Positions 502 through 26,951 of a DNA stretch of 64,000 nt are shown in pieces. The stretch is from Macrostomum lignano (taxonomy: Eukaryota). A model generated the notes under the pieces. That model was not told the origin of the DNA. It worked only from the letters and a program-made list of their open reading frames with translations, and searched no databases. Made by a program: the position numbers and the translations under genes. The stretch covers positions 124,001-188,000 of the forward strand of contig NIVC01001277.1 in the NCBI GenBank assembly GCA_002269645.1, read 5' to 3'. Positions within the stretch are counted from its first letter, which is position 1. Each line of letters starts with the position of its first letter.

Positions 502-647
502 TTGAGGCCGACCAGAATTTCAACGCATGTGCTAAAATTTCCAAGCCGAAATGCGGTGACAGCCAGCCGGGCGATCGAGTTGAACAGCGACAGTCGCTCC
601 TCTGGTGACGGCTGCGTGACGATGAGGTGCGTGATCCAGGAGCTCAC
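502..647 (-). CDS. Exon: CDC25 RasGEF domain (VSSWITHLIVTQPSPEERLSLFNSIARLAVTAFRLGNFSTCVEILVGLK)
   Basis: Not in ORF track (no ATG). Acceptor cgtaag| and donor CTCAA|GTGAGT. Matches the CDC25 VSSW...GNF...EI..GL pattern; human PLCE1, from memory, has EVSSWVTWLIL...MGNYNAVMEFLAGL. Confidence 0.85.
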
Positions 648-1187
648 CTTACGAATGAGGAAGATTGAGAATCGACTGGTGGGTGTTTGCAGATATCAGA
701 AATAATCGCTGATTTGCCAAAAGGGTGACGGAGTGCGCAGAAGAATCAAAACCCCGTGTATTGAGTTGCATGCATTGACGGCATTCTGTTATTCCTTTCA
801 GAGCCCGAATTTACCAAGGAATTTTCCAAATGGGAGGCAGGAAATGATGAGGAATGGAGAGATGGACAAGCCAGACCTAAGGAAATATGACTAATTAATC
901 CTCGTAATTTGAGTGAAAAATAATTGACATAAAAATGAAGGCCACTCAGCATTGATCATTTATGGACAGGCAGTCCTTATATGGTAGGGCACTACTCTAA
1001 TATCGTAAGTAAAATCCCATTCCTTAGCAATTAGTGAGCAGGTTTTTCAGTCTTCGAGATGCAGAAGATGAAATTCTTAAGATGCCTGCAAATCGCGTTC
1101 TGTCCCATATTGAGAACCGCATTGAGAACCTCAATAGACAATAATTTTTTTCAGGGCATCAAATGACAAATCTTGGTCGGGCATTCT

Positions 1188-1418
1188 TACAATGCTGGCT
1201 ACAGATACAGATGTGACCCCCCCTCTTACAATGCTGGCTACAGATACAGATGTGACCCCCCCTCTTACAATGCTGGCTACAGATACAGATGTGACCCCCC
1301 CTCTTACAATGCTGGCTACAGATATAGATGTGACCCCCCCTCTTACAATGCTGGCTACAGATACAGATGTGACCCCCCCTCTTACAATGCTGGCTACAGA
1401 TACAGATGTGACCCCCTT
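1188..1418. repeat. 39-bp minisatellite, ~6 copies
   Basis: Unit ACAATGCTGGCTACAGATACAGATGTGACCCCCCCTCTT. Confidence 0.95.
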
Positions 1419-1439
1419 CGAGCGCTCGCGCAGCCGCAC

Positions 1440-1737
1440 AATGAGATCTTTGACCGTCTTGTCGCTCTGACCGCCGCCCAGACCTGCCTTGGTAGTGTCG
1501 AAAGCTACGCTGCGCAGGTAGGCCTGAGGCGGAACAGACAGGAACAGGCGGTGCTCGCTGTCAGACATGAGCAGGGCCACCTCCTCGGGAAAGTGGATCA
1601 GAGCCTGCAGTTCCTCGAGCTCGTCGGAGTGCACCATGGTGGCCTCAATGTCTGAACGCAGCAGAATGTGCCGACGGTGCAGATCTGTCGGGTGAAGTCG
1701 AGCATCTCTGTCGAGTTTTGACAGTCTGAGTCTTATG
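1440..1737 (-). CDS. Exon: start of CDC25 RasGEF domain (DELEELQALIHFPEEVALLMSDSEHRLFLSVPPQAYL...TVKDLI)
   Basis: Within ORF 1131..1760. Phase-2 acceptor ctttag|. FPEEVA motif as in the PLC-epsilon RasGEF. The donor position is uncertain (1440 or within the adjacent 39-bp repeat). Confidence 0.8.
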
Positions 1738-1874
1738 CTAAAGTGATTCAAGAGTCCCATTGGGAATCAGTAAAACAGTAAGATTCACCAGAATCGAGGC
1801 AGCTCTGGCATTGTACAGACATAAGTTCAGTTTTTTTAGTTATTAGATGGGTCACCTTTCAAAATTCGTTTCAC

Positions 1875-2023
1875 CTGTCGGCTTGAATGAAGTCTTTGAA
1901 GTGCCATTCCGTTATTAAAATCTGCTTCCTTTTCCACACTTCCCTTGAGCGAAGCCTTGCACGCGCTTGGCTTTGGAAAGTGGAGAAAGCTTTTCTTGAC
2001 CCCAGAAAGTCGGATGGTTTGTA
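1875..2023 (-). CDS. Probable linker exon (YKPSDFLGSRKAF...REVWKRKQILITEWHFKDFIQAD)
   Basis: catttag| acceptor (phase 0) and GACAG|GTGAAA donor (phase 2). Open frame; phases join the FERM-C exon to the CDC25 exon. Confidence 0.6.
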
Positions 2024-2279
2024 CTAAATGCTTCTGTCTCCCATCAAAAAGTTATTGATTGTCCAGTTGGCGTTTATACTCGTGTGGATACTTGTTTATT
2101 ATTTGTCTAGTTTTACGTTGAGAACGTGGGGAAAAGCTCACTGAGATACCGGAGGCTTCTTCGAAACCACCAACGGGAAATTTTTGCGATTTAGTTAGTG
2201 TTTACCGCTGAGCTGTTTTGTCCCTCATCGAGTATTCTCATAGAATCATCTTACCGAACTCTAGGCTGCTCCGTCTAAC

Positions 2280-2678
2280 CAGAAGCCCGTCGCACTCGAG
2301 AACTTCGCACAGTGCCAAAGACAGCGATCGAAGCGTGTCCTCGCCAGGGCACAGCAGCGTCCAGGGTCTGCAGGCCTGGAACTCCAGCTCCACCGCGTGC
2401 GCCGCGGGCGGCCGACGGGTCAGGTGCCACTGGCGCAGCTCCGAGACTGGCTGCGACCGGATGAGCGACTTGGTCTTGCCGTCCAGCAGCACGATGCGCT
2501 CCTCCGAGATGCCGAGCAGTCGGGACTGCTTGCGCTGCAGGCCACTCCGCGGCAGCTCCTTCACCTGGTAGATTTTGCAGCCATATGAGGGCAGTTTCCG
2601 GCAGAGTTTGGCGTACATCTGCTTCAGCTTCATCTCGTTATCGTAGAACGGTGTGTGCCACAGTTTGCTGTGCTTCTC
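2280..2678 (-). CDS. Exon: end of FERM B-lobe and FERM C (PTB/PH-like) lobe
   Basis: EKHSKLWHTPFYDNEMKLKQMYAKLCRKLPSYGCKIYQVKE...RLLGISEERIVLLD resembles the talin-type Y..LCR.LPtYG...F.VKE motif. ttccag| acceptor. Candidate donors CTG|GTTAGA (2280) or TTCG|GTAAGA (2255); in-frame stop at 2238 if unspliced. Confidence 0.8.
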
Positions 2679-4483: not shown

Positions 4484-4663
4484 CTGAATCAGAGCGTGCA
4501 CCTTGCCGCTATTGTGGTAGTCCGGCGGCAGATAGCGAGCCAGAATTCGCTTCATCTCCTCCAGCTGCCTGTCCTCTTCGACATTCTCGCTGACGCAGGA
4601 GAGCTGCTTCATCAGGCGTTTTTTACCGACAGACACTCTTCCAGGTGACCATTTGCCCTGCTG
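4484..4663 (-). CDS. Exon: FERM B-lobe (…EEMKRILARYLPPDYHNSGKVHALIQ)
   Basis: Donor ATTCAG|GTAAGC (phase 0). Tandem acceptors ttcag/cag/cag upstream restore frame with the 4752..4973 exon. Confidence 0.75.
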
Positions 4664-4751: not shown

Positions 4752-4973
4752 CGATCTCAAAAACTCCTTTCGTCGGCTTGCAACGTCGCCTCGATGCCAG
4801 GCGCCGCCGAACCCGCTGAAGGCGCCAGCAAAACTGAAGGCGCCGCTGCCGCCGCCGCCACCACCGCCGCCTTCCTCGGGCCACGCGTCGTCCAAGTGCA
4901 GCTGCATGGCTGCCAAGGTTGCTGCTTCGTCCTTAGTGCAGGGCAAGTCCCCGCTAGTGACCATCTGTTTGAA
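4752..4973 (-). CDS. Exon: FERM B-lobe (FKQMVTSGDLPCTKDEAATLAAMQLHL)
   Basis: tttcag| acceptor and TCG|GTGAGT donor. FERM-central G.LPC...A..LAA.QL motif. Confidence 0.8.
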
Positions 4974-5039: not shown

Positions 5040-5111
5040 CTTTTTGTACTCAATATTGACGGTTTCGCCTTTCTCCTTGCCCTCCGGGTTTTTTGACTTG
5101 CATTGCTGCTC
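5040..5111 (-). CDS. Exon: first helix of FERM B-lobe (EQQCKSKNPEGKEKGETVNIEYKK)
   Basis: tattag| acceptor and AAG|GTAAGT donor. Spliced NIEYKKFKQMVTSGDLPC has the same spacing as talin NLLYVQARDDILNGSHPV. Confidence 0.7.
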
Positions 5112-5179: not shown

Positions 5180-7050
5180 CTTCTGAAACACTGCATCCAA
5201 CTCTAGAAACACTACATCCTGCTCTAGAAACACTGCATCCAACTCTATTTAAACACTGCATCCAACTCTAGAAACACTGCATCCAACTCTATAAACACTG
5301 CATCCAACTCTAGAAACACCGCATCCAACCCTAAAAACACTGCATCCAACTCTAGAAACACTACATCCTGCTCTAGAAACACTGCATCCAACTCTATTTA
5401 AACACTGCATCCAACTCTAGAAACACTGCATCCAACTCTATTTAAACACTGCATCCGACTCTAGAAACACTGCATCCAACTCTATAAACACTGCATCCAA
5501 CTCTAGAAACACCGCATCCAACCCTAAAAACACTGCATCCAACTCTAGAAACACTGCATCCAACTCTATTTAAACACTGCATCCAACTCTAGAAACACTG
5601 CATCCAACTCTATTTAAACACTGCATCCAACTCTATTTAAACACTGCATCCAACTCTAGAAACACTGCATCCAACTCTAGAAACACTGCATCCAACTCTA
5701 TTGAAACACTGCATCCAACTCTATTTAAACACTGCATCCAACTCTATTGAAACACTGCACCCAACTCTATTTAAACACTGCATCCAACTCTATTGAAACA
5801 CTGCATCCAACTCTATTGAAACACTGCATCCAACTCTATTGAAACACTGCATCCAACTCTATTGAAACACTGCATCCAACTCTATTTAAACACTGCATCC
5901 AACTCTATTGAAACACTGCATCCAACTCTATTGAAACACTGCATCCAACTCTATTTAAACACTGCATCCAACTCTATTAAAACACTGCATCCAACTCTAT
6001 TTAAACACTGCATCCAACTCTATTGAAACACTGCATCCAACTCTATTTAAACACTGCATCCAACTCTAAAAACACTGCATCCAACTCTATTTAAACACTG
6101 CATCCAACTCTATTGAAACACTGCATCCAACTCTATTTAAACACTGCATCCAACTCTATTGAAACACTGCATCCAACTCTATTGAAACACTGCATCCAAC
6201 TCTATTTAAACACTGCATCCAACTCTATTGAAACACTGCATCCAACTCTATTTAAACACTGCATCCAACTCTATTGAAACACTGCATCCAACTCTATTTA
6301 AACACTGCATCCAACTCTATTTAAACACTGCATCCAACTCTATTGAAACACTGCATCCAACTCTATTGAAACACTGCATCCAACTCTATTTAAACACTGC
6401 ATCCAACTCTATTGAAACACTGCATCCAACTCTATTTAAACACTGCATCCAACTCTATTGAAACACTGCATCCAACTCTATTTAAACACTGCATCCAACT
6501 CTATTGAAACACTGCATCCAACTCTATTGAAACAATGCATCCAACTCTATTGAAACACTGCATCCAACTCTATTTAAACACTGCATCCAACTCTAAAAAC
6601 ACTGCATCCAACTCTATTTAAACACTGCATCCAACTCTATTTAAACACTGCATCCAACTCTATTGAAACACTGCATCCAACTCTATTGAAACACTGCATC
6701 CAACTCTATTTAAACACTGCATCCAACTCTATTTAAACACTGCATCCAACTCTATTTAAACACTGCATCCAACTCTATTGAAACACTGCATCCAACTCTA
6801 TTGAAACACTGCATCCAACTCTATTTAAACACTGCATCCAACTCTAAAAACACTGCATCCAACTCTATTTAAACACTGCATCCAACTCTATTTAAACACT
6901 GCATCCAACTCTATTGAAACACTGCATCCAACTCTATTGAAACACTGCATCCAACTCTATTTAAACACTGCATCCAACTCTATTTAAACACTGCATCCAA
7001 CTCTATTTAAACACTGCATCCAACTCTACGAGCTAGAAACACTGCATTTA
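5180..7050. repeat. 21-23-bp minisatellite, ~80 copies
   Basis: Unit AAACACTGCATCCAACTCTATT(T/G), with a CTCTAG variant. Confidence 0.97.
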
Positions 7051-7124: not shown

Positions 7125-8225
7125 GCAAGACTTGATGAAGCTCCAGACGCCCTGACACCAGACTCGCTCCGAGTCGCCTAACGTGGCTAACAGTCCTAGC
7201 AATTCTTTGACGTCGTCCTTGGCCAGCAGCAGGTCAGAAGGTGACGTCCGAGCCCAAGTCTCCAACAGTCGACAGGTGGCCACAGCAGAGGCGGCAGGGA
7301 CGGCTGCTAAATCTGGCAAAGTTGGGGAGATTCGGTTCTGCTGCTGGTTTTGCTGATGTTGCTGGTGTGGGTTCTGTTGTTGTTGTGAGGATTCCTGACA
7401 TTTTATGCCAGTCATGTTCGCTGCCGGTAGATTTACAAGCTGACGCTGCAATGCAACCAATTCTGTTGCGGCTGTTGCCTCTGCTTCGCATCTGGCACAG
7501 CGACAGCAACTGTGCTCCTTGTCTGCCTGTTGGTGCTGGTTCTGATGCTGGTGCTGGTGCTGGTGCTTATGCTTATGCTGGTGCTCGTGCTGATGCTGCT
7601 GGTTCAGCCCTTTGCTATTAGATCCCCGCAGAGAAGCTCTGCCCCAACGGAAAAGCCATCGTTCTCCAACTGCCTCGTGCTGATGCTGCTGCTGGTGCTG
7701 CCTGGCGTTCTCAACTCCGCCAGTTGCTCCTAGCAAAGACAAATAGTCATTGTCCTCTTCGTCACCTCCAGCTGTCCTCGCTGAGATCTGATCTTCACTC
7801 TCCTCCGCCGGATGACCAGAAGTCGCAGGTGCTACAGGTGCCGTCTCAATACCACCAGTCGTTGCCAGATCTTTGCGTCTCTCCGCCGTCTCCCAGGGGC
7901 AAACTGGGTCCTCGTCTTCCGGCGGCGATGGCGGAGGCGGCGGCGGCGGCTGTGGCCGCGGCTGGTGCTGCGGTGTTGGCGGCGACGGCTCTGCCGAGTA
8001 GAACTTCTCCGATCGACGCTCCCTGTACTGCCGGCAGAACAGCCGATGGTTGAGCAGCCGGACTAGGATCTGGGGATGCGCCAGGCACGGCAGGGCGACC
8101 ACCAAAGCATCGGCGAGGCAGCGCTCCTCAAGCAGGAGCGACTCCGCGCCAGCATCTGCTGAGCCTAAGAGATACTTCAGGGCTGCCGATGGAAGACTCA
8201 GGCCGGAAGGCAGACGAATGTCGGG
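7125..8225 (-). CDS. Large exon: RasGEF-N (REM)-like helices with long Q/H/P low-complexity inserts
   Basis: ORF 7065..8246. tttcag| acceptor and TGC|GTGCGT donor (phase 0). ALPCLAHPQILVRLLNHRLF and CRLLETWARTSPSDLL resemble REM helices. Confidence 0.7.
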
Positions 8226-9746: not shown

Positions 9747-10794
9747 GTTGCAGGCTGTAGTCTATCCAATTGTTGCCAAATTGACGTGACCAACTTTTTC
9801 ACTAAAGTGCCCTGGAAGACACCAAGTAGCATTAGACCCATGCAGTTTCAAAAAGATTAGATAAACGTCATCCAGACGCCGCACAAGGCCGAAGTTACAC
9901 TTCGAGTGGCTTGCCGTCAGCTGCTGCCGTCTAAACAGAGTACATGTAAGTATATTTTTCTGTCTTAATTATTTCGGTTGCCTGGGGGACTAAGGCAACT
10001 GACGACTAAGCTGCAGGTACTAGTAAGGACCCATGTACTAGTACTGTACCCTGTACATCCTACTGACTCAGAAGACTTCGGTCATCTTGAACCGATTTTG
10101 ATAATAACTGCTTTAGTTTTAAAGCCGGGTGAATTCTCTTCAACTCATTTGAGCTGCAGGTTTTTTTAAGGGAGCGCCAGACCCCAAGGGACGCCTCTCC
10201 GTGGCATCCTACTCACCAACTGGTTGATGAACTATTGGGCAGCTTGATCACCAATGACCTATGCTTAACATGCTGACACAGCTGGAACACCCATAAAACA
10301 AGTCCCATTAGGATATCGAATAAAAGTACACTTTGCTGTCTTTTTCCCACGCAGAGAGGCTATTTCACGGCGGATGCCTGATATTCTCCAATGCGGCTCA
10401 AGAATCTGCATTCCGGGCCCTTCCTGATATCCGATCGGCCACTGCCGGCGTATAATCGTAATAATTAAGCTCATTTAAATTTCTTAATCAAGTCTTAAGT
10501 CTAGCAAGATTTTGATCGAATAATGAATTATATTAACCAGCTTTGAGCGCCGAGAGAAGCACCGGATGTTTTTTCTCATCGCCGCACTAACTGATAGCCT
10601 GTCAATTAAAAGCCAAACCTCTCTGCATAATTGACTCTCTGCCCTCCTTCTGCAGTGCTTTCCTACTGGCACTTTAATTACATTGCCAATTCTTCAATTG
10701 ACTCGACAGGAATACCAAAGTATCTTTTCAATTTGGACACAAGGAACTGGCATCCAATTTTGTACACTTTGGATTAGAAGCAACAGCAGCAGCC

Positions 10795-11250
10795 ACCTCC
10801 AGATGTACACACGTAACTACCTCCAAATGTACACACGTAACCACCTCCCGTTGTACACACGTAAACACCTCCAGATGTACACACATAAACACCTCCAGAT
10901 GTACACACATAAACACCTCCAGATGTACACACATAAACACCTCCAGATGTACACACATAAACACCTCCAGATGTACACACATAAACACCTCCAGATGTAC
11001 ACACATAAACACCTCCAGATGTACACATATAAACACCTCCAGATGTACACATATAAACACCTCCAGATGTACACACATAAACACCTCCAAATGTACACAC
11101 GTAAACACCTCCAGATGTACACAAGTAACCACCTCCAGATGTACACGAGTAACCACCTCCCGATGTACACAAGTAACCACCTCCAGATGTACACACACAC
11201 ACACGTAACCACCTCCAGATTTAAACACGTAACCACCTCCCGATGTACAC
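10795..11250. repeat. 24-bp minisatellite
   Basis: Unit AAACACCTCCAGATGTACACACAT. Confidence 0.95.
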
Positions 11251-11404: not shown

Positions 11405-11577
11405 GTCGGTGAGTAGCAGCACCACAGCCTCAAGTGAGCAAGCCTTCAGTTCGCCCTCCTCGTCGAGACAGAATTGATCACCAAAAGCCATTCGTTCAAC
11501 GTAAGCGTCTTCCTGTCGGTACTGATGTTGCTGCTGATGCTGATGTTGTGTCTGACCCGATGCTGTCCACAGTTGTA
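11405..11577 (-). CDS. Exon: REM-like start (FCLDEEGELKACSLEAVVLLLTD)
   Basis: tttttaag| acceptor (phase 1) and GAC|GTAAGT donor (phase 0). Resembles the REM 'kagtLekLve.LT' start. Confidence 0.7.
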
Positions 11578-12144: not shown

Positions 12145-12391
12145 CTTGATTGCCGAACAGATCAAATCGACCTGCTAAGCAGCGGAACTGGCCCAGGTGT
12201 ACCAGAATTCTTGTTGCCAAGAACTTGACAAATGGCGCATAGCGGGTGGTGTGGTTGGTGTAGTACCATTCGTCAGATGGCAGCAGCAGTTGCAGCAGAC
12301 TGTCCGTGATCAGCAGGTCCAGCAGGTCCTCGTGAGTGCTGGGGTCCAGGGTCAGACAGCCGACCGCTTGCAGCAGCAGGCAGAGCAGATG
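12145..12391 (-). CDS. Exon (HLLCLLLQAVGCLTLDPS...LLLPSDEWYYTNHTTRYAPFVKFLATRILVHLG)
   Basis: tattcag| acceptor and CAAG|GTTAGT donor. Non-repetitive, protein-like tail of ORF 12140..12796. Confidence 0.75.
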
Positions 12392-12399: not shown

Positions 12400-12735
12400 A
12401 TTGGTCAGGAGGACGTGCAAATTGGTCAGGAGGATGCAATAGTCGGTCAGGAAGGGACTGTAACATGTCAGGAGGACGTGCAAATTGGTCAGGAGGATGC
12501 AATAGTCGGTCAGGAAGGGACTGTAACATGTCAGGAGGACGTGCAAATTGGTCAGGAGGATGCAATAGTCGGTCAGGAAGGGACTGTAACATGTCAGGAG
12601 GACGTGCAAATTGGTCAGGAGGATGCAATAGTCGGTCAGGAAGGGACTGTAACATGTCAGGAGGACGTGCAAATTGGTCAGGAGGATGCAATAGTCGGTC
12701 AGGAAGGGACTGTAACATGTCAGGAGGACGCAAAA
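12400..12735. repeat. 63-bp minisatellite, ~5 copies
   Basis: GGTCAGGAGGACGTGCAAATTGGTCAGGAGGATGCAATAGTCGGTCAGGAAGGGACTGTAACATG-type unit with internal GGTCAGGA subunits. Confidence 0.95.
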
Positions 12736-12825: not shown

Positions 12826-13608
12826 CGGATCATAGTTGGGGTCCAGAGTGTCCACCAGTTTGCGCAGGTGACCCTCGGACACCAGTCTGGCCCGAGCCTC
12901 GGCGCTGTGGCAGACGAAGGCGAGCAGGCGCGCGGCCAAGATCTGGTTGCAGTGCAGAGCGCAGGCGCGCATCCGGACGCTCGGCGCGCATTTCGTCCGG
13001 AAGTTCAGCGTCCGACTCTGCGCGGTCAGGCCGGATTGAATGACGGAGATGAGCAGGCCCGGCTCAGCCTGGCTCAGGCGGTCCAGCGCTGAGCCGCCGC
13101 CTGTCTCGGCAGCGCCAGACGGGCGCAGGGAGATCAGCGCCGTGGCCAGCGACGCCCGTCGGGCGGCCGCCGCTGACGTAGCGGAGCCGCCGCCGCTGCC
13201 ATCGCCGGTTGATGAAGCTTGATGATGAGACTGCGGAGTTGGTTGCTGCTGCTGCTGCTGTTGTTGCTGCTGTTGCTTAGCCAGAACGAGGCTGGAGAAC
13301 TGCCGCTGCTGAGTGTCGTCGGCAGCTTCGCTGTCCGCTGAGGCGGCTGCAGCCGCGTCCGCTACGAGGTCGCTGACGCCGTAGGAGAGCGACAGGTCAA
13401 CCAGACGATTGGCAAAAGCCAGAGCAGTGAATTGCAACGACTGATGGCTCACAGCGCCGCCCGCGCCCCCGCCGCTGCTGCCGCTAGCACCGCCTGAAGT
13501 TCCAGCACTGCTCTTCAGCAGGTCAAAGGCCGCCTCAAGAAGTCCGGCCAGACAGGAGTGAACTGAATCTTCTGCCTGCTGCGACTGCTGCAGCTCTGCC
13601 TCGCACGT
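12826..13608 (-). CDS. Exon: helical/ARM-like region with polyQ/polyA/G runs, ending SEGHLRKLVDTLDPNYDP
   Basis: 783-nt open frame; cccag| acceptor and CCG|GTGCGT donor, both phase 0. Confidence 0.75.
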
Positions 13609-14884: not shown

Positions 14885-15480
14885 CACTGAATATCTAGGG
14901 TCGGGGGTAGCAGTGCCCTCCACTGAATATCTAGGGTCGGGGATAGCAGTGCCCTCCACTGAATATCTAGGGTCGGGGATAGCTGTGCCCTCCACTGAAT
15001 ATCTAGGGTCGGGGATAGCAGTGCCCTCCACTGAATATCTAGGGTCGGGGATAGCAGTGCCCTCCACTGAATATCTAGGGTCGAGGGTAGCAGTGCCCTC
15101 CACTGAATATCTAGGGTCGGGGGTAGCAGTGCCCTCCACTGAATATCTAGGGTCGGGGGTAGCAGTGCCCTCCACTGAATATCTAGGGTCGGGGGTAGCA
15201 GTGCCCTCCACTGAATATCTAGGGTCGGGGGTAGCAGTGCCCTCCACTGAATATCTAGGGTCGGGGGTAGCAGTGCCCTCCACTGAATATCTAGGGTCGG
15301 GGGTAGCAGTGTCCTCCACTGAATATCTAGGGTCGGGGGTAGCAGTGCCCTCCACTGAATATCTAGGGTCGGGGGTAGCAGTGCCCACTGAAAATCTAGG
15401 GGTGGGGGTAGCAGTGCCCACAGAACATCTATTGGTGGGGGTAGCAGTGTCCACAGAACATCTATGGGTGGGGGTAGCAG
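14885..15480. repeat. 36-bp minisatellite
   Basis: Unit GTGCCCTCCACTGAATATCTAGGGTCGGGGGTAGCA, degenerating at the right end. Confidence 0.95.
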
Positions 15481-16360: not shown

Positions 16361-16554
16361 CTTCATTAAACTATGAAAGAAATTGCTCAACAATTTGTCC
16401 AGCCTCTGTTCCTCATCCAGGCCGCAGTTCTGCATCGAGCTGACGGCCTCGCCAACGAAAGCGCTCATGCCGCGGCAGACGCAGCGAAGATTGTCGCCGC
16501 CGCTGCTGGACATCTTCGTCAGCACGCCGATGCTTCGTTCAAGATCTTCCATGC
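16361..16554 (-). CDS. Exon (GMEDLERSIGVLTKM...DKLLSNFFHSLMK)
   Basis: ccgcag| acceptor (phase 1) and AAG|GTGAGC donor (phase 0). Confidence 0.7.
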
Positions 16555-19800: not shown

Positions 19801-20030
19801 GGGAGGCTGGCCCAGCAACTGAGGATCTGTGAGACTGGCCTAGCAACTGAGGATCTGGGAGGCTGGCCTAGCAACTGAGGATCTGGGAGACTGGCCCAGC
19901 AACTGAGGATCTGGGAGACTGGCCTAGCAACTGAGGATCTGGGAGACTGGCCTAGCAACTGAGGATCTGGGAGGCTGGCACAGCAACTGAGGATCTGGGA
20001 GGCTGGCCCAGCAACTGAGGATCTGGGAGG
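16858..20030. repeat. 28-bp minisatellite, ~110 copies, with higher-order block duplications
   Basis: Unit GCAACTGAGGATCTGGGAG(G/A)CTGGCC(T/C)A. Confidence 0.98.
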
Positions 20031-20939: not shown

Positions 20940-21902
20940 CCCTATCTCACTGTCTCTCCTGACTCTCTCTCCTGACTCTCTCCCTCATTTTCTCCCCTCA
21001 CTCTCTTCCTGACTCTCTCCCCTGACTCTCTCCCCTGACTCTCTCTCCTGACTATCTTCCCTGACTCTCTCCCCTGACTCTCTCCCCTGACTCTCTCCCC
21101 TGACTTTCTCTCCTGACTCTCTCTCCTGACTATCTTCCCTGACTCTCTCCCCTGACTCTCTCCCCTGAAACTCTCCCCTGACTCTCCACTGACTCTCTCC
21201 CCTGACTCTCTCCTCTCACTTTCTCCCCTGACTCTCTCCCCTGACTCTCTCCCTTGACTTTCTTCCCTGACTCTCTCCTCATTCTCTCCCCTCACTCTCT
21301 TCCTGACTCTCTTCCCTGACTCTCTTCCCTGACTCTCTCCCCTGACTCTCTTCTCTCACTCCCTCACTCTCTTGAATCTCTTCCTCACTCTCTTGAATCT
21401 CTTCCTCACTTTCTTGAATCTCTTCCTCACTTTCTTGAATCTCTTCCTCACTTTCTTGAATCTCTCCCCTCACTTTCTACCCTCACTCTCTCCTTTGACT
21501 CTTTCCCTTGACTACCTCCCCAAACTCCCTCCCCTAACTCTCTCCCTTGAGTCTCTCCTCTGACTCTCCCCTCCACTTTCTCCCCTCAATTTTTCCCTTG
21601 ACCCTCCCCCCCCTGACTCTCTTGACTATAATTATAAGTAGATTTTTCTGTAAAAACGTGCGTAAATAACCCGACTCATGCCTCATCAATGCAGACTCCG
21701 AGTTCACTGCCATCATTTGTCTCCTGTTGATGCCTTGAGGCCGCAGAGCCCAGAATTCCTCGCTCTCTGGCTAATCGGGTAGCCGTCTGCCAACGGGACG
21801 GCCTTTGCTGTTGTTGCTGCTGGGACCTGCTTGGGGGGTTTTGTTTTGAAGTTTAAACTTTTAGCTGTGGTTTTTATAGCAGTCTAGATCCTTTTGAGAG
21901 TA

Positions 21903-21952
<50 letters not shown>

Positions 21953-22400
21953 GAGAGGATGAGAGCGGAGAAGATGAGAGCAGAGAGAAAGGATGAGAGC
22001 GGAGAGGATGAGAGCGGAGAAGATGAGAGCGGAGAAGATGAGAGCAGAGAGAAAGCATGAGAGCGGAGTGAGAGAGGATGAGAGCGGAGTGAGAGAGGAT
22101 GAGAGCGGAGAGAGAGAGGATGAGAGCGGAGTAAGAGATGATGAGAGCGGAGTGAGAGAGGATGAGAGCGGAGTGAGAGAGGATGAGAGCGGAGTGAGAG
22201 AGGATGAGAGCGGAGTGAGAGAGGATGAGAGCGGAGTGAGAGACGATGAGAGCGGAGAGAGAGAGGATGAGAGCGGAGTGAGAGAGGATGAGAGCGGAGA
22301 GAGAGAGGATGAGAGCGGAGTGAGAGAGGATGAGAGTGGAGTGAGAGAGGATGAGAGTGGAGTGAGAGAGGATGAGAGTGAAGAGAGAGGAGGGGGAGAG
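20940..22400. repeat. CT-rich (20940-21600) and GA-rich (21900-22400, 21-bp unit) low-complexity tracts
   Basis: CTCTCCCCTGA-type and GAGAGGATGAGAGCGGAGT-type units. Confidence 0.9.
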
Positions 22401-22639
22401 CGGAGGTGCTGTGCAATTGCTTTGTAGGTATGTACATCTGCTATGTACATCGGTTTTCCGATATTGATTAGTCGCCGTCTAAAGTATAAATATACCCAGT
22501 GGGAAGGCCAACGTGATCTAAAGGTCGTGTGTACCCCAAAACCAGTCTGATTTTCTCAATACAACAAGAGGCAGAGTGATGCGTAAAAGCATTTCGGGAC
22601 AGAAACAAAGGCAAATTGCAATGCCCAAAGCCTACGTAC

Positions 22640-23737
22640 CTTGGTGCCTGCAGCTGCACTGACTGACAGCTCGTTGACGACTCGTCCCGTCCCGACGGCC
22701 GCCTTCGCCTCCGTGGAGACCGCGACGCTGCCGTGGACGCGCCAAGCCGCAGCGCCAGTTGGATCAGCATCCGGGACTCGCGCCTCATCAGGCCGCCAGA
22801 GTCCAGCTGATCCGCAGTGGCTCCCAGGGCGTTCCGCACTGCGCCGAAGCCTCCGTAGGCGGCGCCGGCCTCGAGAAGGTGCCGAAGGACGCTCAGCGAG
22901 GCCGGCCTGTCCTCGTTTGACGACGTGACCGCAGCGGCCACGGCGAGATGCAGCGGCGAGTTGCCGAGGCACGGCTCCACGCAGTCTGGCCGGGCTCCGT
23001 GCGACAGCAGGATCGCCACCAGGGCCGGGCGGCGCAGCGCCGTGGCCAGCAGCAGCGGCGGAGCTTCAGCCAGCGCTGACGACTGGAAGGCGGCCGAGAG
23101 AGCCAGGCGGGCAGTGAAGGAGCAGCAGCCGCCGCTGCCGTCTTCTCCAGCCTGCTGGATCAGCCATCTCCGAATCCAGTTGGCGTCGGGCTTGGCTCTG
23201 CTGTGCGGCTCAGGCGGCTCGGCGCGCTGCGGCACCAGCCAGTCGGCCAGGGCGGCCCAGGCGCTCGGATCGACCAGCGGGCCCGGCCGGTTCGGCTCGA
23301 ACAGCCCGGCGTTGCCGCCGAACCTCAACAGGGCGCGCAGGCAGTCCTCGGAGTTGCTCAACACCGCGGCGTGCAGACAGCGGCGCAGTCGGCTGGAGTT
23401 CTCGTCCAGCTCCGAGGCGCTGGCGCTAGCGACGATCCCGGAGCTGGAAGATACGACGCGCCACCAACGACGGAGGAGGCGGCGTAGAGTGTCGGAGTCG
23501 CGGCTGTTGATGGCGCGTTCGAGGCTGGCGATGTCGCTGGACGGGATGGCGGCGGAGGGAGGCGACGATGCGGCCGAAGGTGTCGCCGAGTGGCTTCGGT
23601 GGTGAACTGAGATCGGGCCCGAGACGGCCTCAGGCATGGACAGTGCGCTGCTGGAGAGTCTGGGCTGCTGACTGTCGGAGTTGCCGGCTAGGGGGTGAGG
23701 CTGCAGTAACTGCGGCTGCTTCGACATCGTTGAAGAC
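22640..23737 (-). CDS. Exon: ankyrin-repeat region
   Basis: ORF 22468..23727: CLHAAVLSNSEDCLRALLRFGGN, PPLLLATALRRPALVAILLSHGARPD, GNSPLHLAV. Donor CCAAG|GTACGT; acceptor ccgcag| (phase 2). Confidence 0.8.
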
Positions 23738-23749
23738 CTGCGGCTGCTT

Positions 23750-24160
23750 GGTGAGGGGGTCAGGGGTGACTGGTGAGGGCGGTCATGAGGGGGGTCAGGA
23801 GTAGCTGCTGATGCCTGTTGAGGGGGTCAGGGGTGACTGGTGAGGGGGGTCATGAGGGGGGTCACGGGTGGCTGCTGATGCCTGGTGAGGGGTCATGAGG
23901 GGATCAGGGGTGGCCGCTGATGCTTAGTGGAGGGGGTCAAGAGGGGGTCAGGGGTGGCCGCTGATGCTTGGTGGAGGGGGTCAAGAGGGGATCAGGGGTG
24001 GCCGCTGATGCTTAGTGGAGGGGGTCAAGAGGGGGTCAGGGGTGGCCGCTGATGCTTGGTGGAGGGGGTCAAGAGGGGATCAGGGGTGGCCGCTGATGCT
24101 TAGTGGAGGGGGTCAAAAGGGGGTCAGGGGTGGCTGCTGATGCCTGGTAAGGGGGGTCAC
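23750..24160. repeat. 44-bp G-run-rich minisatellite
   Basis: Unit TCAGGGGTGGCCGCTGATGCTTGGTGGAGGGGGTCAAGAGGGG-type. Confidence 0.9.
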
Positions 24161-24499
24161 CATTATACACTCGTATCATAAAATTTCAGAATTGTGTTGT
24201 GTGTGGGGGAACTCTAAGGGGAATAATATTTTCTTGTATTCCTTTCTTTGTCAGCAGCTTGCCAATTGTATTGTGAAAAAAATGACAAGAGAGGCTGAAT
24301 AAGTGCAGGCGCAGTCATGGCTGCTCGCTAAAAATACAAAGAAAGAACGCAGGTGTGAGAGCCACTGCTAGAGAGGGACTTGTTCTAGAGCTTCCTGGAT
24401 TTGCACTTTCAAATTATCGGAAATCTGGGATAGACGGAAATAGACGGATTAAGAGCAGATAGTGGCGAGAGGGGTGCTGTGAGGGCAAAGAGAAGGAAA

Positions 24500-26360
24500 A
24501 GGGAGAGGGTGAGAGGGTGAGAGTGTGAGGGTGAGACTGAGAAAGTGAGAGGGAGAGGGTGAGAGGGAGAGGGTGAGATGGTGAGAGGGAGAGGGTGAGA
24601 CTGAGAAAGTGAGAGGCAAAGGGTGAGAGCGAGAGGATGAGAGAGAGAGGATAAGAGGGAGAGGGTGAGAGGCAGAGGGTGAGAGCGAGAGGATGAGAAG
24701 GAGAGAGTGAAATGGAGAGGATCAGAGGGAGACCATCAGAGGGAGAGGATGAGAGGGAGAGGGTGAGAGGAAGAAGGTCAGAGGAAGAGGGTGAGGCTGA
24801 GAAAGTGAGAGGCAGAGGGTGAGAGGAAGAGGGTGAGAGGAAGAGGGTGAGAGGGAGAGGGTGAGAGGGAGAGGGTGAGAGGGAGAGGATCAGAGGGAGA
24901 GGGTGAGAGGGAGAGGATCAGAGGGAGAGGGTGAGAGGGAGAGGGTGAGAGGCAAAGGGTGAGAGGCAGAGGGTGAGAGCGAGAGCGAGAGGATGAGAAG
25001 GAGAGGGTGAAATGGAGAGGATCAGAGGGAGACGATCAGAGGGAGAGGATGAGAGGGAGAGGGTGAGAAAGAGAGGGTGATGCTGAGAGGGTGATGCTGA
25101 GAAAGTGAGAGGCAGAGGGTGAGAGGAAGAGGGTGAGAGGGAGAGGGTGAGAGGAAGAGGGTGAGAGGGAGAGGGTGAGAGGGAGAGGGTGAGAGGGAGA
25201 GGGTGAGAGGGAGAGGGTGAGAGGGAGAGGGTGAGAGGGAGAGAGGGAGAGGGTGAACGATAGAGGGTGAGAGGGAGAGGGTGAACGATAGAGGGTGAGA
25301 GGGAGACGATCAGAGGGAGAGGGTGAGGGAGAGAGGTCGAGAACGAGAGGGCGAGAGGGAGAGAATCAGAGGATGAGGGTGAGAGGGGGAGCGGATTAGT
25401 TTTGATGGGTGGGTGCCTAAGACTTTCTGAAGCAGAATAGCTAGTGCGAGGCGAGGAAGTCGGGCATGTGCGGGGACGAAGCTCGGAGCTGAGACCGATG
25501 CACCTGCTGTGTCTGCACGCAGGCCCGCTCGGGCAGCAATCAGTAATCGTGTCTGGCGCCCCCTCGGACAGGAAGCGAAACTTGAATAGTCAGGACTCGA
25601 ATTACCTGTTAATTGGCTGATAATTCTACGGCAGGTTGGAGACATTGGACTAGATCTCTTTAACTGGGAAACTCGAAAGGAAGAGAATGAGGGAGAGGGA
25701 GAGAGGAGAGGGAGGGGGAAAGGGAGAGAGGAGAGGGAGAGAGGAGAGGAAGAGGAGAGGGAGAGGGAGAGAGATGAGAAAGGGGGAAAGAAGAGAGGGA
25801 GATAGGAGAGGAAGAGGCAGAGGGAAGAGAGGGAGAGAGGAGAGAGATTCGAAAGGGAGAGAGGAGAGAAGAGAGGGAGAGAGGAGAGGGAGAGGAGAGG
25901 AGAGGGAGAGGGAGAGGGAGAGGGGGAGGGAGAGGGAGAGGGAGAGGGAGAGAGGACAGAGGAGAGAAGAAGAGATGAGAGGGATAGAGGAGAGGGAGAG
26001 AGGAAAGGAAGGGAGGAGAGGGAGGGAGAGAGGAGAGGGAGAGGAGAGGAGAGGGAGAGATGAGAGGGAGAGAGGAAAGGGAGGGAGAAGAGGGAGGGAG
26101 ATAGGAGAGGGAGAGAGGAGAGAGGGGAGAAGGAGAGATGAGAGGGATAGAGGAGAGGGAGAGAGGAGAGGGAGAGAGGAGATGGAGAGGGAGAGGGAGA
26201 GAGGAGATAGAGAGAGAAGAGAGGGAGAGAGGAGAGGGAGAGAGGAGATGGAGAGGGAGAGGGAGAGAGGAGATAGAGAGAGAAGAGAGGGAGAGAGGAG
26301 AGAGATGGGAAAGGGAGGGAGAAGAGAGGGAGAGACGAGAGGGATAAAGGAGAGGGAGGC
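24500..26360. repeat. Purine-rich (GA) low-complexity tracts
   Basis: GAGAGGGAGAGGGT-type units at 24500-25400 and polypurine at 25680-26360. Confidence 0.9.
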
Positions 26361-26778
26361 AAGAGTCTCAGAGGTAATTGAAGGATATTGAAAAAGCCAG
26401 CTAGAGATGCAGCAGACACTGATAGAGTTAGCGCGGGCACAAAGCGGAATTAATCAGAGAGGTAGGCAAATGAATATCCGAATTATCGTTAGAATCGCAT
26501 ATTAATAAATAACTAATCACCCAAGAGGGAAGGCATGACGGCTCAGTCTCAGTGATAACGGGAAGATTAGGAAGTGATTATTCGGGTTGGATCAGCTCGC
26601 GGGAAGCGGAGGCAGCAATGCAGACTGGCAGTATAGTTCAATATTTGCATGAGGCTCAGATAAGGCGGCAGCCGAGGTCTCAGATGGTCCTGTCAGTTCC
26701 CCGACTCCCCTGCAGTCTGCTGTTGCAGAATTCGAAAAAGTTTTCAAAAAAATCCGCGACAGAGAAGCCTTGGCTCAC

Positions 26779-26951
26779 CTGTTGTTCAGGGAGATATGAC
26801 CTTCGGACTTCTTCGAGCTGCCACTAGAAGGAGCTGATGGGCGTTCTGGGTCGGACAGAAGCAGGCCGATAGACATGGCGCGGGCTTTATCCTGAGCGAT
26901 GAGGGAGAGGCAGAGATCGTGCCAAGCCTCTTCATCAAAGCGGCTCGCCAT
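26779..26951 (-). CDS. Candidate first coding exon (MASRFDEEAWHDLCLSLIAQDKARAMSIGLLL...)
   Basis: ATG-initiated open frame ending AACAG|GTGAGC (phase 2), matching the ankyrin exon acceptor. No recognised domain. Confidence 0.45.

What the first reader, a model, noticed from the sequence alone, without database searches (positions are those of the whole stretch)
502..26951. Unusual RasGEF architecture: ankyrin-helical-REM-FERM(B/C)-CDC25 of PLC-epsilon type, with FERM lobes inside the GEF module
Seen: phase-compatible exons place FERM B and C lobes (5111 to ~2280) between a REM-like exon (8225-7125) and CDC25 exons (1737-1440, 647-502) on one strand. A linker exon (2023-1875) bridges the phases. 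Knowledge: the FPEEVA and VSSW motifs typify the PLC-epsilon (PLCE1/plc-1) CDC25 domain, and REM and CDC25 are usually close or separated by PDZ/RA as in RAPGEF2. Inference: one ankyrin- and FERM-containing Ras/Rap GEF, possibly a PLC-epsilon relative or ancestor-like form, with no recognisable FERM F1 lobe. An ORF-only annotation would miss it.
Basis: partly seen in the sequence, partly recalled or inferred. Interest (0 to 1): 0.75.

Follow-up and report, generated by a model that had tools for sequence, protein, structure and literature searches.

The report
Flatworm PLC-epsilon with ankyrin, REM, half-FERM
The region holds the front half of a flatworm phospholipase C-epsilon gene in a long invertebrate form, with ankyrin repeats, a REM-type domain and a talin-like half-FERM ahead of its Ras/Rap-activating domain; the PLC-epsilon papers I read do not mention this layout, though it is widespread in sequence databases.

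Summary
The core observation holds. On the minus strand, canonically spliced, phase-compatible exons encode ankyrin repeats, an armadillo-like helical region, a REM-type region, FERM lobes F2 and F3 (no F1), and the first half of a CDC25/RasGEF domain cut by the window edge. Pfam FERM_M and RasGEF pass their curated thresholds on the spliced product. The F2-F3 part matches talin by sequence (4e-8) and by fold.

Some details are wrong. The "linker exon" 2023-1875 has no homology support. The F3 exon runs to 2255 and most likely joins directly at 1684.

The DNA is Macrostomum lignano. The exons are collinear with 3,000-3,800-residue proteins from snail, nematodes, tick, spider, aphid, starfish and acanthocephalan. 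Those I scanned read Ank...FERM_M-RasGEF-EF-PLC X/Y-C2-RA, which is a long-form PLC-epsilon. The PLC-epsilon motifs FPEEVA and VSSW are present.

Stand-alone Ank-REM-FERM-CDC25 proteins without PLC exist in Capsaspora, Nematostella and a sponge. Frog and amphioxus PLCE1 show none of the N-terminal module.

The PLC core lies outside the window, so it is inferred. A 2026 PLC-epsilon review states that the N-terminus has no homology to other proteins. I rate this a new variant of a known kind, of moderate interest.

The parts
26779..26951 (-). Candidate first coding exon (ATG at 26951, MASRFDEEAWHDL..., donor GTGAGC, ends in phase 2). Unverified.
   Evidence: The sequence and donor were read. It is phase-compatible with acceptors at 23746, 23743 and 23737 in the Ank reading frame. 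No homologue covers it. The next gene upstream on this strand, a carnitine acyltransferase, has its lowest identified exon at 32626, so a start here is plausible.
22640..23746 (-). Ankyrin-repeat exon. An alternative start is the ATG at 23727. The donor is AAG|GTACGT at 22640, phase 2.
   Evidence: Pfam Ank scores 30.2 bits against a cutoff of 21.1, with Ank_3 also above its cutoff and Ank_2 and Ank_4 just below theirs. Orthologue hits fall at 23412-23281 (snail residues 157-196) and at 23100-22939 / 23019-22939 (aphid, about residues 485-537).
16361..16554 (-). Possible small helical exon (MEDLERSIGVLTKM...LMK). Weakly supported, and its link to the Ank exon is unresolved.
   Evidence: It has an AG acceptor and a GTGAGC donor. 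Its end phase (0) fits the acceptor at 13608, but its start phase does not fit the 22640 donor. No orthologue hit.
12826..13608 (-). Helical, armadillo-like exon 1. The conserved part is 13092-12826. The 5' boundary is uncertain. The donor is CCG|GTGCGT.
   Evidence: It matches snail residues 857-945 at 1.8e-22, and also nematode, tick and aphid proteins. The M. lignano UniRef fragments P0002 and P0006 map here. The snail region has a weak ARM_ARMC5 Pfam hit, far below its cutoff.
12145..12391 (-). Helical, armadillo-like exon 2 (HLLCLLLQAVGCLTLDP...FGNQ), ending in phase 1.
   Evidence: P0002 and P0006 are 100% identical here. Orthologues reach 64% identity (snail), with the best E-value 7e-17. 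The intron upstream of it holds a 63-bp x 5 repeat.
11405..11577 (-). Exon carrying the start of the REM-type domain (...EGELKACSLEAVVLLLTD).
   Evidence: P0006 maps here. It aligns with the first REM segment of the Capsaspora, Nematostella and tick homologues. The AlphaFold model shows a beta-hairpin followed by a helix.
7125..8225 (-). REM-type exon. Block 1 is LADALVVALPCLAHPQILVRLLNHRLF and block 2 is AVATCRLLETWARTSPSDLLL...VWCQGVWSFIKSC. The two blocks are separated by roughly 250 residues of low-complexity Q/H/P-rich sequence.
   Evidence: The reading frame is open throughout. It has no Pfam hit of its own. The blocks align with the Capsaspora RasGEF_N match (43.6 bits) and with the conserved h-P-x-I-L-x-RLL-x-H motif of long-form PLC-epsilon proteins. 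RasGEF_N is found in 3 of 7 aligned homologues. The profile touches both REM blocks of SOS2 at E=0.03.
5040..5111 (-). 24-codon exon joining REM to F2 (EQQCKSKNPEGKEKGETVNIEYKK).
   Evidence: AG and GTAAGT sites, phase 0 to 0. It is present in the M. lignano model P0002.
4752..4973 (-). FERM F2 exon a (FKQMVTSGDLPCTKDEAATLAAMQLHLDDAWPEE, followed by a Gly-rich insert).
   Evidence: FERM_M hit. It matches orthologues at the start of their FERM_M region, for example snail residues 1726-1759 at 2.7e-12.
4484..4663 (-). FERM F2 exon b (...KKRLMKQLSCVSENVEEDRQLEEMKRILARYLPPDYHNSGKVHALIQ).
   Evidence: Splice sites are. It lies within the FERM_M envelope. It is hit by snail residues 1837-1877 and by the Biomphalaria-like protein.
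2255..2678 (-). End of F2 plus the talin-like F3 (PTB-like) lobe. The exon ends ...VRRSSLEF|G at donor G|GTAAGA, phase 1. Read-through of this donor would stop at 2238.
   Evidence: Talin-2 F2-F3 matches at 4e-8, and the Trp of window 'RQW' is aligned to talin 'KRW'. AlphaFold gives this region block-mean pLDDT of about 62-85, and Foldseek's top hits are all talin F2F3 or F3 (E about 1e-7; TM up to 0.79 on the isolated F3). The snail protein aligns through to 2256 at 1.7e-40.
1413..1684 (-). Short F3-CDC25 linker plus the start of the CDC25/RasGEF domain (DLHRRHILL...ELEELQALIHFPEEVALLMSD...KTVKDLIVRLRERSKG). The 3' end may instead be 1440.
   Evidence: The acceptor CCGACAG|AT completes the codon GAT. 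The snail orthologue is contiguous across the 2255|1684 junction. The paralogue P0001 has the same junction (...LEFDLHRR...). Ending at 1413 scores 245 bits and ending at 1440 scores 241 bits.
502..647 (-). CDC25/RasGEF exon (VSSWITHLIVTQPSPEERLSLFNSIARLAVTAFRLGNFSTCVEILVGLK) with donor GTGAGT. The gene then leaves the window through an (AGTT)n microsatellite.
   Evidence: On its own, RasGEF scores 34 bits at 3.3e-8, covering profile positions 40-96 of 181. Orthologue hits reach 1e-14. No further exon is seen downstream to position 1.

Best explanation
The region is the 5' half of the Macrostomum lignano orthologue of phospholipase C-epsilon (PLCE1 / plc-1), in the long form found in many invertebrates.

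Shown here:
- One minus-strand gene encodes ankyrin repeats, an armadillo-like helical region and a REM-type domain split by a low-complexity insert.
- These are followed by a talin-like FERM F2-F3 pair without F1, a short linker, and the first half of a PLC-epsilon-type CDC25 domain.

Inferred by orthology:
- The rest of CDC25, then PH, EF hands, catalytic X/Y barrel, C2 and two RA domains lie to the left of the window.

Likely mechanism, inferred from established knowledge of the families:
- As in mammalian PLC-epsilon, the CDC25 domain would load GTP onto Rap1-type GTPases. The lipase core would be recruited and activated by Ras/Rap-GTP on the RA domains, giving a feed-forward loop.
- The REM-type domain would buttress the CDC25 helical hairpin, as it does in SOS, RasGRF and Epac.
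- The F2-F3 pair sits at the same topological position as the RA or PDZ domains of Epac2 and RapGEF2/6. It would tether or gate the exchange module at membranes by binding acidic phosphoinositides and/or NPxY-type cytoplasmic tails, as talin F2-F3 does.
- The ankyrin and armadillo-like parts would act as scaffolding surfaces.
For: Species:
- The UniRef M. lignano fragments P0002 and P0006 match the window's translated exons at up to 100% and 99% local identity.

Domains:
- Ank, FERM_M and RasGEF are above their Pfam cutoffs.
- The F2-F3 part matches talin by sequence and by predicted fold.

Orthology:
- An exhaustive profile search found 91 representative proteins at E<=1e-30. The top long hits are 2,200-3,630 residues.
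- Five of them, Auanema, Adelges, Asterias, Bradybaena and Saccoglossus, were scanned with Pfam. All carry RasGEF followed by EF-hand_like, PI-PLC-X, PI-PLC-Y, C2 and RA. FERM_M precedes RasGEF in four, though in Auanema it scores just below its cutoff. In Adelges it was not listed, but the FERM-RasGEF profile matched that protein across the region.
- Trichinella, Rhipicephalus, Parasteatoda and Biomphalaria-like entries are named PLC epsilon-1 by their sources.
- Window exons hit these proteins in collinear order, from Ank to CDC25.
- The refined 280-residue F3-CDC25 product aligns end to end with snail PLC-epsilon residues 1878-2155 at 45% identity, E=3e-76. Stand-alone relatives reach only 21-33% identity, mostly in split pieces. 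The CDC25 part is 36% identical to amphioxus PLCE1 and 32% to frog PLCE1.
- The FPEEVA and VSSW motifs are confined to the PLC-epsilon clade among the sequences checked.

One gene rather than several:
- In Amphiura, three adjacent same-strand gene models (Ank 1416 aa; FERM_M+RasGEF 482 aa; EF/X/Y/C2/RA 1898 aa) are separated by only 59 and 49 bp.
- In the Ditylenchus locus, exons homologous to residues 546-3081 of Steinernema PLC-epsilon run along one strand, on both sides of the annotated 610-aa 'rasGEF' protein.
Against: - The PLC catalytic core and the second half of the CDC25 domain are not in the window. No M. lignano protein covering them was recovered.
- There is no transcript evidence.
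- Exon connectivity between 22640 and 13608 is unresolved. The 22640 donor and the 16554 acceptor are out of phase.
- The window's own REM region has no Pfam hit. Its predicted structure gave no significant fold match.
- Both AlphaFold models have low overall confidence (mean pLDDT 48 and 53), built from 7-8 sequence alignments.
- Stand-alone Ank-REM-FERM-CDC25 genes do exist in other lineages, so a PLC-less gene is not excluded.
- All the functional roles proposed for REM, F2-F3, Ank and the armadillo-like part are inference.
Confidence: 0.8

Rival explanations
1. It is a stand-alone Ank-REM-FERM(F2F3)-CDC25 exchange factor with no lipase part, like the proteins of Capsaspora, Nematostella and Oscarella.
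For: Such PLC-less proteins exist with the same domain order. The window ends inside CDC25, so the lipase part is unseen. No M. lignano PLC-epsilon core was found.
Against: The F3-CDC25 part is 45% identical in a single alignment to snail PLC-epsilon, but only 21-33% identical, mostly in split alignments, to the stand-alone forms. It carries FPEEVA and VSSW, which the six stand-alone forms checked lack. Among the proteins I named or scanned, every stand-alone form with a known source came from a non-bilaterian animal or a protist, and three came from unnamed environmental or raw-read assemblies.
Confidence: 0.1
2. There are two or more separate or nested genes: an Ank/armadillo-like gene and a FERM-RasGEF gene, or a FERM-terminated transcript ending at the stop at 2238. 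The joined architecture would then be an artefact of reading exons together.
For: Automatic annotations split the locus this way in Amphiura and Ditylenchus. The M. lignano UniRef entries are fragments. Steinernema has annotated short isoforms that end by read-through just after the F3 exon, at the boundary equivalent to window 2255. The connection between 22640 and 16554/13608 is unresolved.
Against: P0002 and P0006 already join the armadillo-like, REM and F2 exons in one model. RefSeq and GenBank models in starfish, aphid, tick, snail and nematodes are single proteins of 3,000-3,800 residues, and those I scanned hold all the domains. The split models sit 49-59 bp apart on the same strand. 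The snail protein and the paralogue P0001 are continuous across the F3|CDC25 junction. A short isoform could coexist with the long one rather than replace it.
Confidence: 0.06
3. It is a decaying duplicate (pseudogene) of PLC-epsilon in a duplicated, repeat-rich genome.
For: M. lignano has at least one diverged paralogue (P0001, 61% identity in the alignment) and a 99%-identical second copy or allele (P0006). The introns are packed with minisatellites, and large low-complexity inserts sit in the REM and F2 regions.
Against: Eight consecutive exons give an 863-residue product with no stop or frameshift. All junctions are canonical. The conserved motifs and the talin-type Trp are intact.
Confidence: 0.04

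Closest known systems
Phospholipase C-epsilon (mammalian PLCE1; C. elegans PLC-1/PLC210)
   Same: It has a CDC25-type exchange domain with the FPEEVA and (RFxE)VSSW motifs. The CDC25 N-terminal half is 32% identical to frog PLCE1 and 36% to amphioxus PLCE1. Rat E530 lies inside FPEEVA.
   Different: The frog and amphioxus short forms show no detectable Ank, REM or FERM; profiles match only from the start of CDC25. A 2026 review says the N-terminus has no homology to other proteins. Here more than 1,000 residues of Ank, armadillo-like, REM and F2F3 sequence precede CDC25. The lipase core is not visible in the window.
Long-form invertebrate PLC-epsilon database entries (e.g. Bradybaena similaris BFY97294.1, 3844 aa; Trichinella britovi KRY51589.1; Asterias rubens XP_033632686.1; Adelges cooleyi XP_050438662.1)
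   Same: The order is the same (Ank, armadillo-like, REM motif, FERM_M/F3, CDC25) and the exon matches are collinear. Identity to the snail over F3-CDC25 is 45%.
   Different: The window copy has a low-complexity insert of roughly 250 residues in REM and a Gly-rich insert in F2. It is cut off in CDC25. As far as I found, these entries are automatic annotations and are not described in papers.
Stand-alone Ank-REM-FERM-CDC25 proteins (Capsaspora XP_004364199.2; Nematostella XP_032222674.2; an Oscarella pearsei transcript; DEP-bearing forms from unnamed environmental/raw-read assemblies)
   Same: The module order is the same. Capsaspora has a Pfam-significant RasGEF_N immediately before FERM_M, and the window's REM blocks align to it.
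   Different: They have no PLC part and lack the FPEEVA and VSSW motifs. Identity to the window product is only 21-33%.
Talin (and kindlin) head, lobes F2-F3
   Same: Talin is the best match by sequence (4e-8) and by fold (E about 1e-7). The Trp of talin 'KRW' is conserved as 'RQW'. From my own knowledge, that Trp is talin-1 W359, which is needed for integrin-tail binding.
   Different: There is no F0/F1 and no rod domain. F2 carries a long insert. The pair is embedded between a REM domain and a CDC25 domain.
Epac2 and RapGEF2/6 (PDZ-GEF): REM - inserted domain - CDC25
   Same: The topology is the same: a folded domain is inserted between REM and CDC25. This rests on established knowledge of those families and was not tested here.
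   Different: In those proteins the insert is an RA and/or PDZ domain, not FERM F2-F3. They have cyclic-nucleotide-binding domains rather than ankyrin repeats. They did not appear as close sequence relatives.

Membership tests
Phospholipase C-epsilon | CDC25/RasGEF domain of PLC-epsilon type (motifs FPEEVA and RFxEVSSW) | tested here: met
   RasGEF scores 27.1 bits against a cutoff of 23.1 on the spliced product, N-terminal half only. The window has HFPEEVA and VSSWITHLIV. These motifs occur in most of the 10 PLC-bearing long forms checked (8 and 8 of 10) and, as FPEEIA and VSSW, in frog PLCE1. They are absent from the six stand-alone forms checked.
Phospholipase C-epsilon | Closest relatives are PLC-epsilon proteins rather than other RasGEFs | tested here: met
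   The 14 highest-scoring comparison proteins are all PLC-epsilon or fragments flanked by PLC exons, at 107-245 bits in single alignments. Stand-alone forms score 39-92 bits. Exons are collinear with these proteins.
Phospholipase C-epsilon | PH-EF-X/Y catalytic barrel-C2-RA1-RA2 core in the same polypeptide | not testable with these tools
   The gene leaves the window at position 502 and below. A search for an M. lignano protein covering CDC25-C/PH found none.
FERM domain (canonical three-lobed) | F2 (FERM_M, acyl-CoA-binding-like) lobe | tested here: met
   FERM_M scores 33.1 bits against a cutoff of 23.8, residues 13-195 of the spliced product.
FERM domain (canonical three-lobed) | F3 (PTB/PH-like) lobe | tested here: met
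   Talin F2-F3 matches at 4e-8. The AlphaFold model shows seven strands plus a C-terminal helix with block-mean pLDDT of about 62-85. Foldseek's top hits are talin F3 and F2F3. The Pfam IRS-type PTB hit is below its cutoff.
FERM domain (canonical three-lobed) | F1 (ubiquitin-like, FERM_N) lobe before F2 | tested here: not met
   No FERM_N hit in the window or in any scanned orthologue. Only about 25 residues lie between the last REM helix and F2. It is therefore an F2-F3 half-FERM, not a canonical FERM.
REM (RasGEF_N) domain | Match to the RasGEF_N profile or fold immediately N-terminal to the exchange module | tested here: inconclusive
   The window sequence alone has no Pfam hit. It aligns block for block with homologues that do: Capsaspora at 43.6 bits, and 3 of 7 aligned members with best E=2.9e-12. 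The profile touches both SOS2 REM blocks at E=0.03. The fold search was not significant; 8 of the 29 weak hits were SOS or Cdc25 chains.
Ankyrin-repeat proteins | Ankyrin repeat profile match | tested here: met
   Ank scores 30.2 bits against a cutoff of 21.1, in two stretches. Ank_3 scores 23.5 against 22.3.
KRIT1-type Ank-FERM Rap1 effectors (considered) | Ankyrin repeats directly followed by a complete F1-F2-F3 FERM, with no GEF domain | tested here: not met
   About 900 or more residues, including the REM domain, separate Ank from FERM. F1 is absent and a CDC25 domain follows. KRIT1 was not among the listed sequence or fold matches.

The most novel reading that the evidence does not exclude
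PLC-epsilon arose when an ancient holozoan exchange factor (Ank-REM-talin-like F2F3-CDC25, still free-standing in Capsaspora, cnidarians and sponges) fused to a PLC core. Most invertebrates, including this flatworm, keep the whole module, while the chordates examined lost it. In the long form, the F2-F3 pair inside the exchange module would bind NPxY-type receptor or integrin tails and phosphoinositides. That would wire adhesion sites directly to Rap1 activation and lipid hydrolysis. It would also explain what the enigmatic N-terminus of PLC-epsilon was originally for.
Probability: 0.3. Interest if true: 0.75.

Novelty: new variant of a known kind. Interest (0 to 1): 0.55.

Why it matters
PLC-epsilon is a much-studied enzyme, implicated in heart disease, nephrotic syndrome and cancer. 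Its N-terminal region is explicitly called structurally and functionally unexplained, and 'without homology to other proteins', in a 2026 review.

This locus and its orthologues show that outside the chordates the enzyme carries a large, recognisable module in front of CDC25: Ank, armadillo-like, REM and a talin-like F2-F3. The same module exists as an independent exchange factor in early-branching animals and in a unicellular relative of animals.

This gives three things:
- a concrete evolutionary origin for the exchange half of PLC-epsilon;
- a REM domain, which the papers I read never mention for PLC-epsilon;
- a testable hypothesis for membrane or receptor targeting through F2-F3.

It also shows that automatic annotation routinely breaks this gene into two or three pieces.

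The limits are that the architecture is already visible in public protein databases, and that the window itself holds only half the gene.

Tried and rejected
Rejected. No orthologue hit them, they gave a worse alignment, and the snail protein and the paralogue are continuous across 2255|1684.
- **Donor at 1440 versus 1413.** Left open (241 versus 245 bits). Orthologues have DLIxRFxE before VSSW, which favours keeping VRLRE. The minisatellite that starts here also repeats a further possible donor, ATT|GTAAGA.
- **Joining the Ank donor (22640) to 16554.** The phases do not fit. At least one exon or a different donor is missing.
- **Internal 'introns' in the REM exon**, as drawn in the UniRef models P0002 and P0006. 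I did not adopt them, because the frame is open throughout and the 8061 donor is weak (GTCCGG). I could not exclude them.
- **Homology between the chordate PLCE1 N-terminus and the long-form module.** Nothing beyond the start of CDC25.
- **AlphaFold of F2-F3-CDC25 and of REM.** Overall confidence was low. Only F3 and the conserved REM helices were confident. The REM fold search was not significant.
- **Literature searches** for FERM, ankyrin or REM in PLC-epsilon and for CDC25 phylogenies. I found no description.
- **Search for the M. lignano CDC25-C/PH part**, using the snail sequence as query. It returned only mollusc, arthropod and unnamed hits.
- **The UniRef label 'RAB3GAP2_C domain-containing'** on P0002 and P0006. 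Pfam did not reproduce it.
- **KRIT1-like and plain talin-like identities.** Rejected on domain order.

Full report
**What is in the sequence**

The minus strand between about 26951 and 502 carries a series of open segments bounded by AG acceptors and GT donors. I translated the segments separately. The 23826-22471 segment gives ankyrin repeats (Ank 30.2 bits, cutoff 21.1). The 4979-4626 segment gives a weak FERM_M match, 2693-2241 a weak IRS-type PTB match, and 695-501 a RasGEF match at 3.3e-8.

Spliced together, the 5111->502 product passes the curated Pfam cutoffs for FERM_M (33.1 bits against 23.8) and RasGEF (27.1 against 23.1). The RasGEF match covers profile positions 10-96 of 181 because the window ends there. 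Against the sequences of solved structures, the best matches are talin-1 and talin-2 F2-F3, down to 4e-8. The Trp of talin 'KRW' aligns to the window's 'RQW'.

An AlphaFold model built on an 8-sequence alignment is poor overall (mean pLDDT 48). It does predict the F3 region as a seven-stranded sandwich plus a C-terminal helix, with block-mean pLDDT of about 62-85. Foldseek's top 28 hits to that model are all talin head, F2F3 or F3 structures (E about 1e-7, TM up to 0.79 on the isolated F3). The FERM B/C lobes and the CDC25 exons on one strand are therefore real and far beyond chance.

**Corrections to the exon model**

The window is Macrostomum lignano. The UniRef fragments P0002 and P0006 match its translated exons at up to 100% and 99% local identity, and already join the helical, REM-like and F2 exons.

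The snail (Bradybaena) protein aligns to window 2684-2256 with its residues 1876-2022, and resumes at window 1685 with residue 2023, with no gap. The M. lignano paralogue P0001 has the same junction...LEFDLHRR....

The donor G|GTAAGA after 2255 (phase 1) and the acceptor CCGACAG|AT at 1684 complete a GAT codon. The refined model scores 245 bits with 12.

Orthologues read DLIxRFxEVSSW. The window's DLIVRLRE is therefore probably coding, which favours a donor at 1413 over 1440, but the difference is small (245 versus 241 bits). A minisatellite begins exactly there.

With exons 11577-11405, 8225-7125, 5111-5040, 4973-4752, 4663-4484, 2678-2255, 1684-1413 and 647-502, the product is 863 residues with no stop.

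Upstream, exon 26951-26779 is phase-compatible with acceptors at 23746, 23743 and 23737. The Ank donor at 22640 cannot be joined in phase to the next candidate exon at 16554, so that stretch is unresolved.

**What the gene is**

An exhaustive profile search with the FERM-CDC25 alignment found 91 representative proteins at E<=1e-30. The best long hits are 2,200-3,630 residues, with the full profile matching at roughly residues 900-2,100 in most of them.

Pfam on Auanema, Adelges, Asterias, Bradybaena and Saccoglossus proteins gives RasGEF, EF-hand_like, PI-PLC-X, PI-PLC-Y, C2 and RA in all five. Ankyrin repeats come first in four of them; the Saccoglossus model begins at FERM_M. FERM_M precedes RasGEF in four, although in Auanema it scores 22.2 bits, just below the 23.8 cutoff. 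It was not listed for Adelges, where the profile nevertheless matched across that region. Source names for Trichinella, Rhipicephalus, Parasteatoda and Biomphalaria-like entries are '1-phosphatidylinositol 4,5-bisphosphate phosphodiesterase epsilon-1'.

The window's exons hit these proteins in collinear order: the Ank exon, the two helical exons, both REM blocks, F2, F3, and the two CDC25 exons. The refined F3-CDC25 product aligns in one piece to the snail enzyme at 45% identity (3e-76). For the CDC25 part, identity is 36% to amphioxus PLCE1 and 32% to frog PLCE1.

FPEEVA-type and VSSW-type motifs occur in most of the PLC-bearing long forms checked and in frog PLCE1, and in none of the six stand-alone relatives checked. 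A rat PLC-epsilon E530G primer spells FPEEVA.

**One gene, often mis-annotated**

In Amphiura, an Ank model, a FERM_M+RasGEF model and an EF/X/Y/C2/RA model lie 59 and 49 bp apart on one strand. In Ditylenchus, the annotated 610-residue 'rasGEF' protein sits in the middle of a run of exons homologous to residues 546-3081 of Steinernema PLC-epsilon.

**The REM-like exon**

The window's REM region has no Pfam hit by itself. Its two blocks are LADALVVALPCLAHPQILVRLLNHRLF and AVATCRLLETWARTSPSDLLL...VWCQGVWSFIKSC. They align with the equivalent blocks of long-form PLC-epsilon proteins, which share a conserved h-P-x-I-L-x-RLL-x-H motif. They also align with the Capsaspora and Nematostella homologues.

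In Capsaspora that segment is a significant RasGEF_N match (43.6 bits against a cutoff of 28.3) lying just before FERM_M. RasGEF_N is found in 3 of the 7 aligned members. A profile of the alignment touches both REM blocks of SOS2 at E=0.03.

The AlphaFold model gives the conserved helices pLDDT of 70-91, but the fold search was not significant. I therefore treat the region as a divergent REM domain, supported by transitive homology.

Only about 25 residues separate its end from F2. No FERM_N hit appears in the window or in any scanned orthologue, so F1 is absent.

**Wider distribution**

The same module without any PLC part occurs in:
- Capsaspora (Ank, RasGEF_N, FERM_M, RasGEF);
- Nematostella (with an IRS-type PTB hit as well);
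- the sponge Oscarella (with an extra N-terminal PTB);
- unnamed proteins from environmental or raw-read assemblies, two of which carry a DEP domain.

Frog and amphioxus PLCE1 match the profiles only from the start of CDC25. Their N-termini show no similarity to the long-form module. The hemichordate Saccoglossus and the echinoderms keep FERM_M.

The simplest reading is an old stand-alone exchange factor that fused to a PLC, with the front part later lost or replaced in chordates. This is inference from presence and absence, not from a tree.

**How it probably works**

The established behaviour of mammalian PLC-epsilon is as follows. The CDC25 domain activates Rap1. Ras or Rap-GTP binds the RA domains and RhoA binds the EF hands, and these recruit and activate the lipase (PMC12501065 and PMC13022664).

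By orthology I expect the same core here. The additional parts would work as follows; this is inference. The REM domain would stabilise the CDC25 hairpin, as in SOS-type exchangers. F2-F3 is inserted where Epac2 and PDZ-GEF carry RA or PDZ domains. It would anchor or gate the exchange module at membranes through phosphoinositides and/or NPxY-type tails, as the conserved talin-type Trp suggests. Ank and the armadillo-like repeats would serve as docking surfaces. None of this was tested.

**Novelty**

Five searches of the paper library found no description of ankyrin, REM or FERM elements in PLC-epsilon. I also read two recent PLC-epsilon papers. The 2026 review says the N-terminus has no homology to other proteins and that its structure and role are open questions.

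The architecture is nevertheless visible in public protein entries; UniRef, for example, calls two Steinernema isoforms 'Band 4.1 domain-containing'. The locus is thus one more member of a database-visible but apparently undescribed long form of a well-known enzyme. I rate that a new variant of a known kind.

**Limits**

- The lipase half is outside the window, and I could not recover it for this species.
- No transcript data were available.
- The 5' exon chain is incomplete.
- The structure models are shallow.

Noticed in passing
window 1-31000 (introns of the gene): The introns are packed with long minisatellites: 28 bp x 113 (16861-20030), 23 bp x 82 (5184-7028), 22 bp x 83 (27074-28908), 22 bp x 50 (29374-30462), 36 bp x 17 (14884-15480), 21 bp x 26 (13680-14220), 24 bp x 17 (10794-11204), 63 bp x 5 (12404-12730) and GA-rich arrays (20949-22405, 23838-26358). 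Several create long spurious ORFs on both strands.
   Followed up: partly
window 1-343: An (AGTT)n microsatellite of about 86 copies fills the left edge of the window, inside the intron after the 647-502 CDC25 exon.
   Followed up: no
window 1185-1416: A 39-bp x 5.9 repeat starts exactly at the candidate donor of the CDC25 exon. It keeps the exon's reading frame open (…GVTSVSVASIVRG… repeated) and repeats a possible donor (ATT|GTAAGA) in every unit, so the true exon end cannot be fixed from sequence alone.
   Followed up: partly
window 2238-2254; Steinernema proteins P0034/P0203 versus P0202: Reading through the donor after the F3 exon reaches a stop after 5 further codons (…LEFGKMIL*). In Steinernema carpocapsae, annotated short isoforms end the same way (…FEVSSGKLFLL*) at the equivalent boundary, while the long isoform continues into CDC25 and PLC. 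A FERM-terminated isoform may be a conserved alternative product.
   Followed up: partly
window 32626-45075, minus strand: Exons of a choline/carnitine O-acyltransferase gene (Pfam Carn_acyltransf, profile positions 2-138, 138-329 and 332-479) lie at 44545-45075, 33976-34743 and 32626-33204. This is the next gene upstream on the same strand, and it has an intron of about 10 kb.
   Followed up: partly
window 46741-51659, plus strand: An apparently intact non-LTR retrotransposon: a 382-aa ORF1 (no Pfam hit) followed by a 1248-aa ORF2 with endonuclease, reverse transcriptase and RNase H domains.
   Followed up: partly
window 62161-63943, minus strand: LTR-retrotransposon integrase split over two ORFs in different frames (Integrase_H2C2 and rve in 62872-63621; Integrase_p58_C and an SH3 in 62161-62841). 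An overlapping upstream ORF (63557-63943) was not examined.
   Followed up: partly
window 36010-43000, plus strand: Three long ORFs (557, 357 and 530 aa) lie inside the acyltransferase intron. The first two have no Pfam match; the third was not scanned. The first has an acidic Ser/Asp-rich repeat. A 421-aa ORF with Pro/Ala repeats lies among them. This may be an uncharacterised mobile element.
   Followed up: no
window 54242-55198, plus strand: A 318-aa ORF with a weak PHD-finger-like Cys/His pattern at its start (20.7 bits, below the cutoff).
   Followed up: no
L001 (Ditylenchus destructor JAKKPZ010000002.1) 51-23738: The annotated 610-aa 'rasGEF domain-containing protein' is a fragment. Exons homologous to residues 546-3081 of Steinernema PLC-epsilon run along the whole 25-kb locus on one strand.
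   Followed up: yes
Amphiura filiformis GCA_039555335.1 (no DNA held): PLC-epsilon is split there into three adjacent gene models (1416 aa Ank; 482 aa FERM_M+RasGEF spanning 153 kb; 1898 aa PLC core), separated by 59 and 49 bp.
   Followed up: partly
M. lignano proteins P0001, P0006: P0006 is 99% identical in BLASTP to the window's FERM-region product, so it is a second allele or recent copy. P0001 is a 61%-identical paralogue of the FERM-CDC25 part. The species therefore carries at least two diverged PLC-epsilon-like loci.
   Followed up: partly
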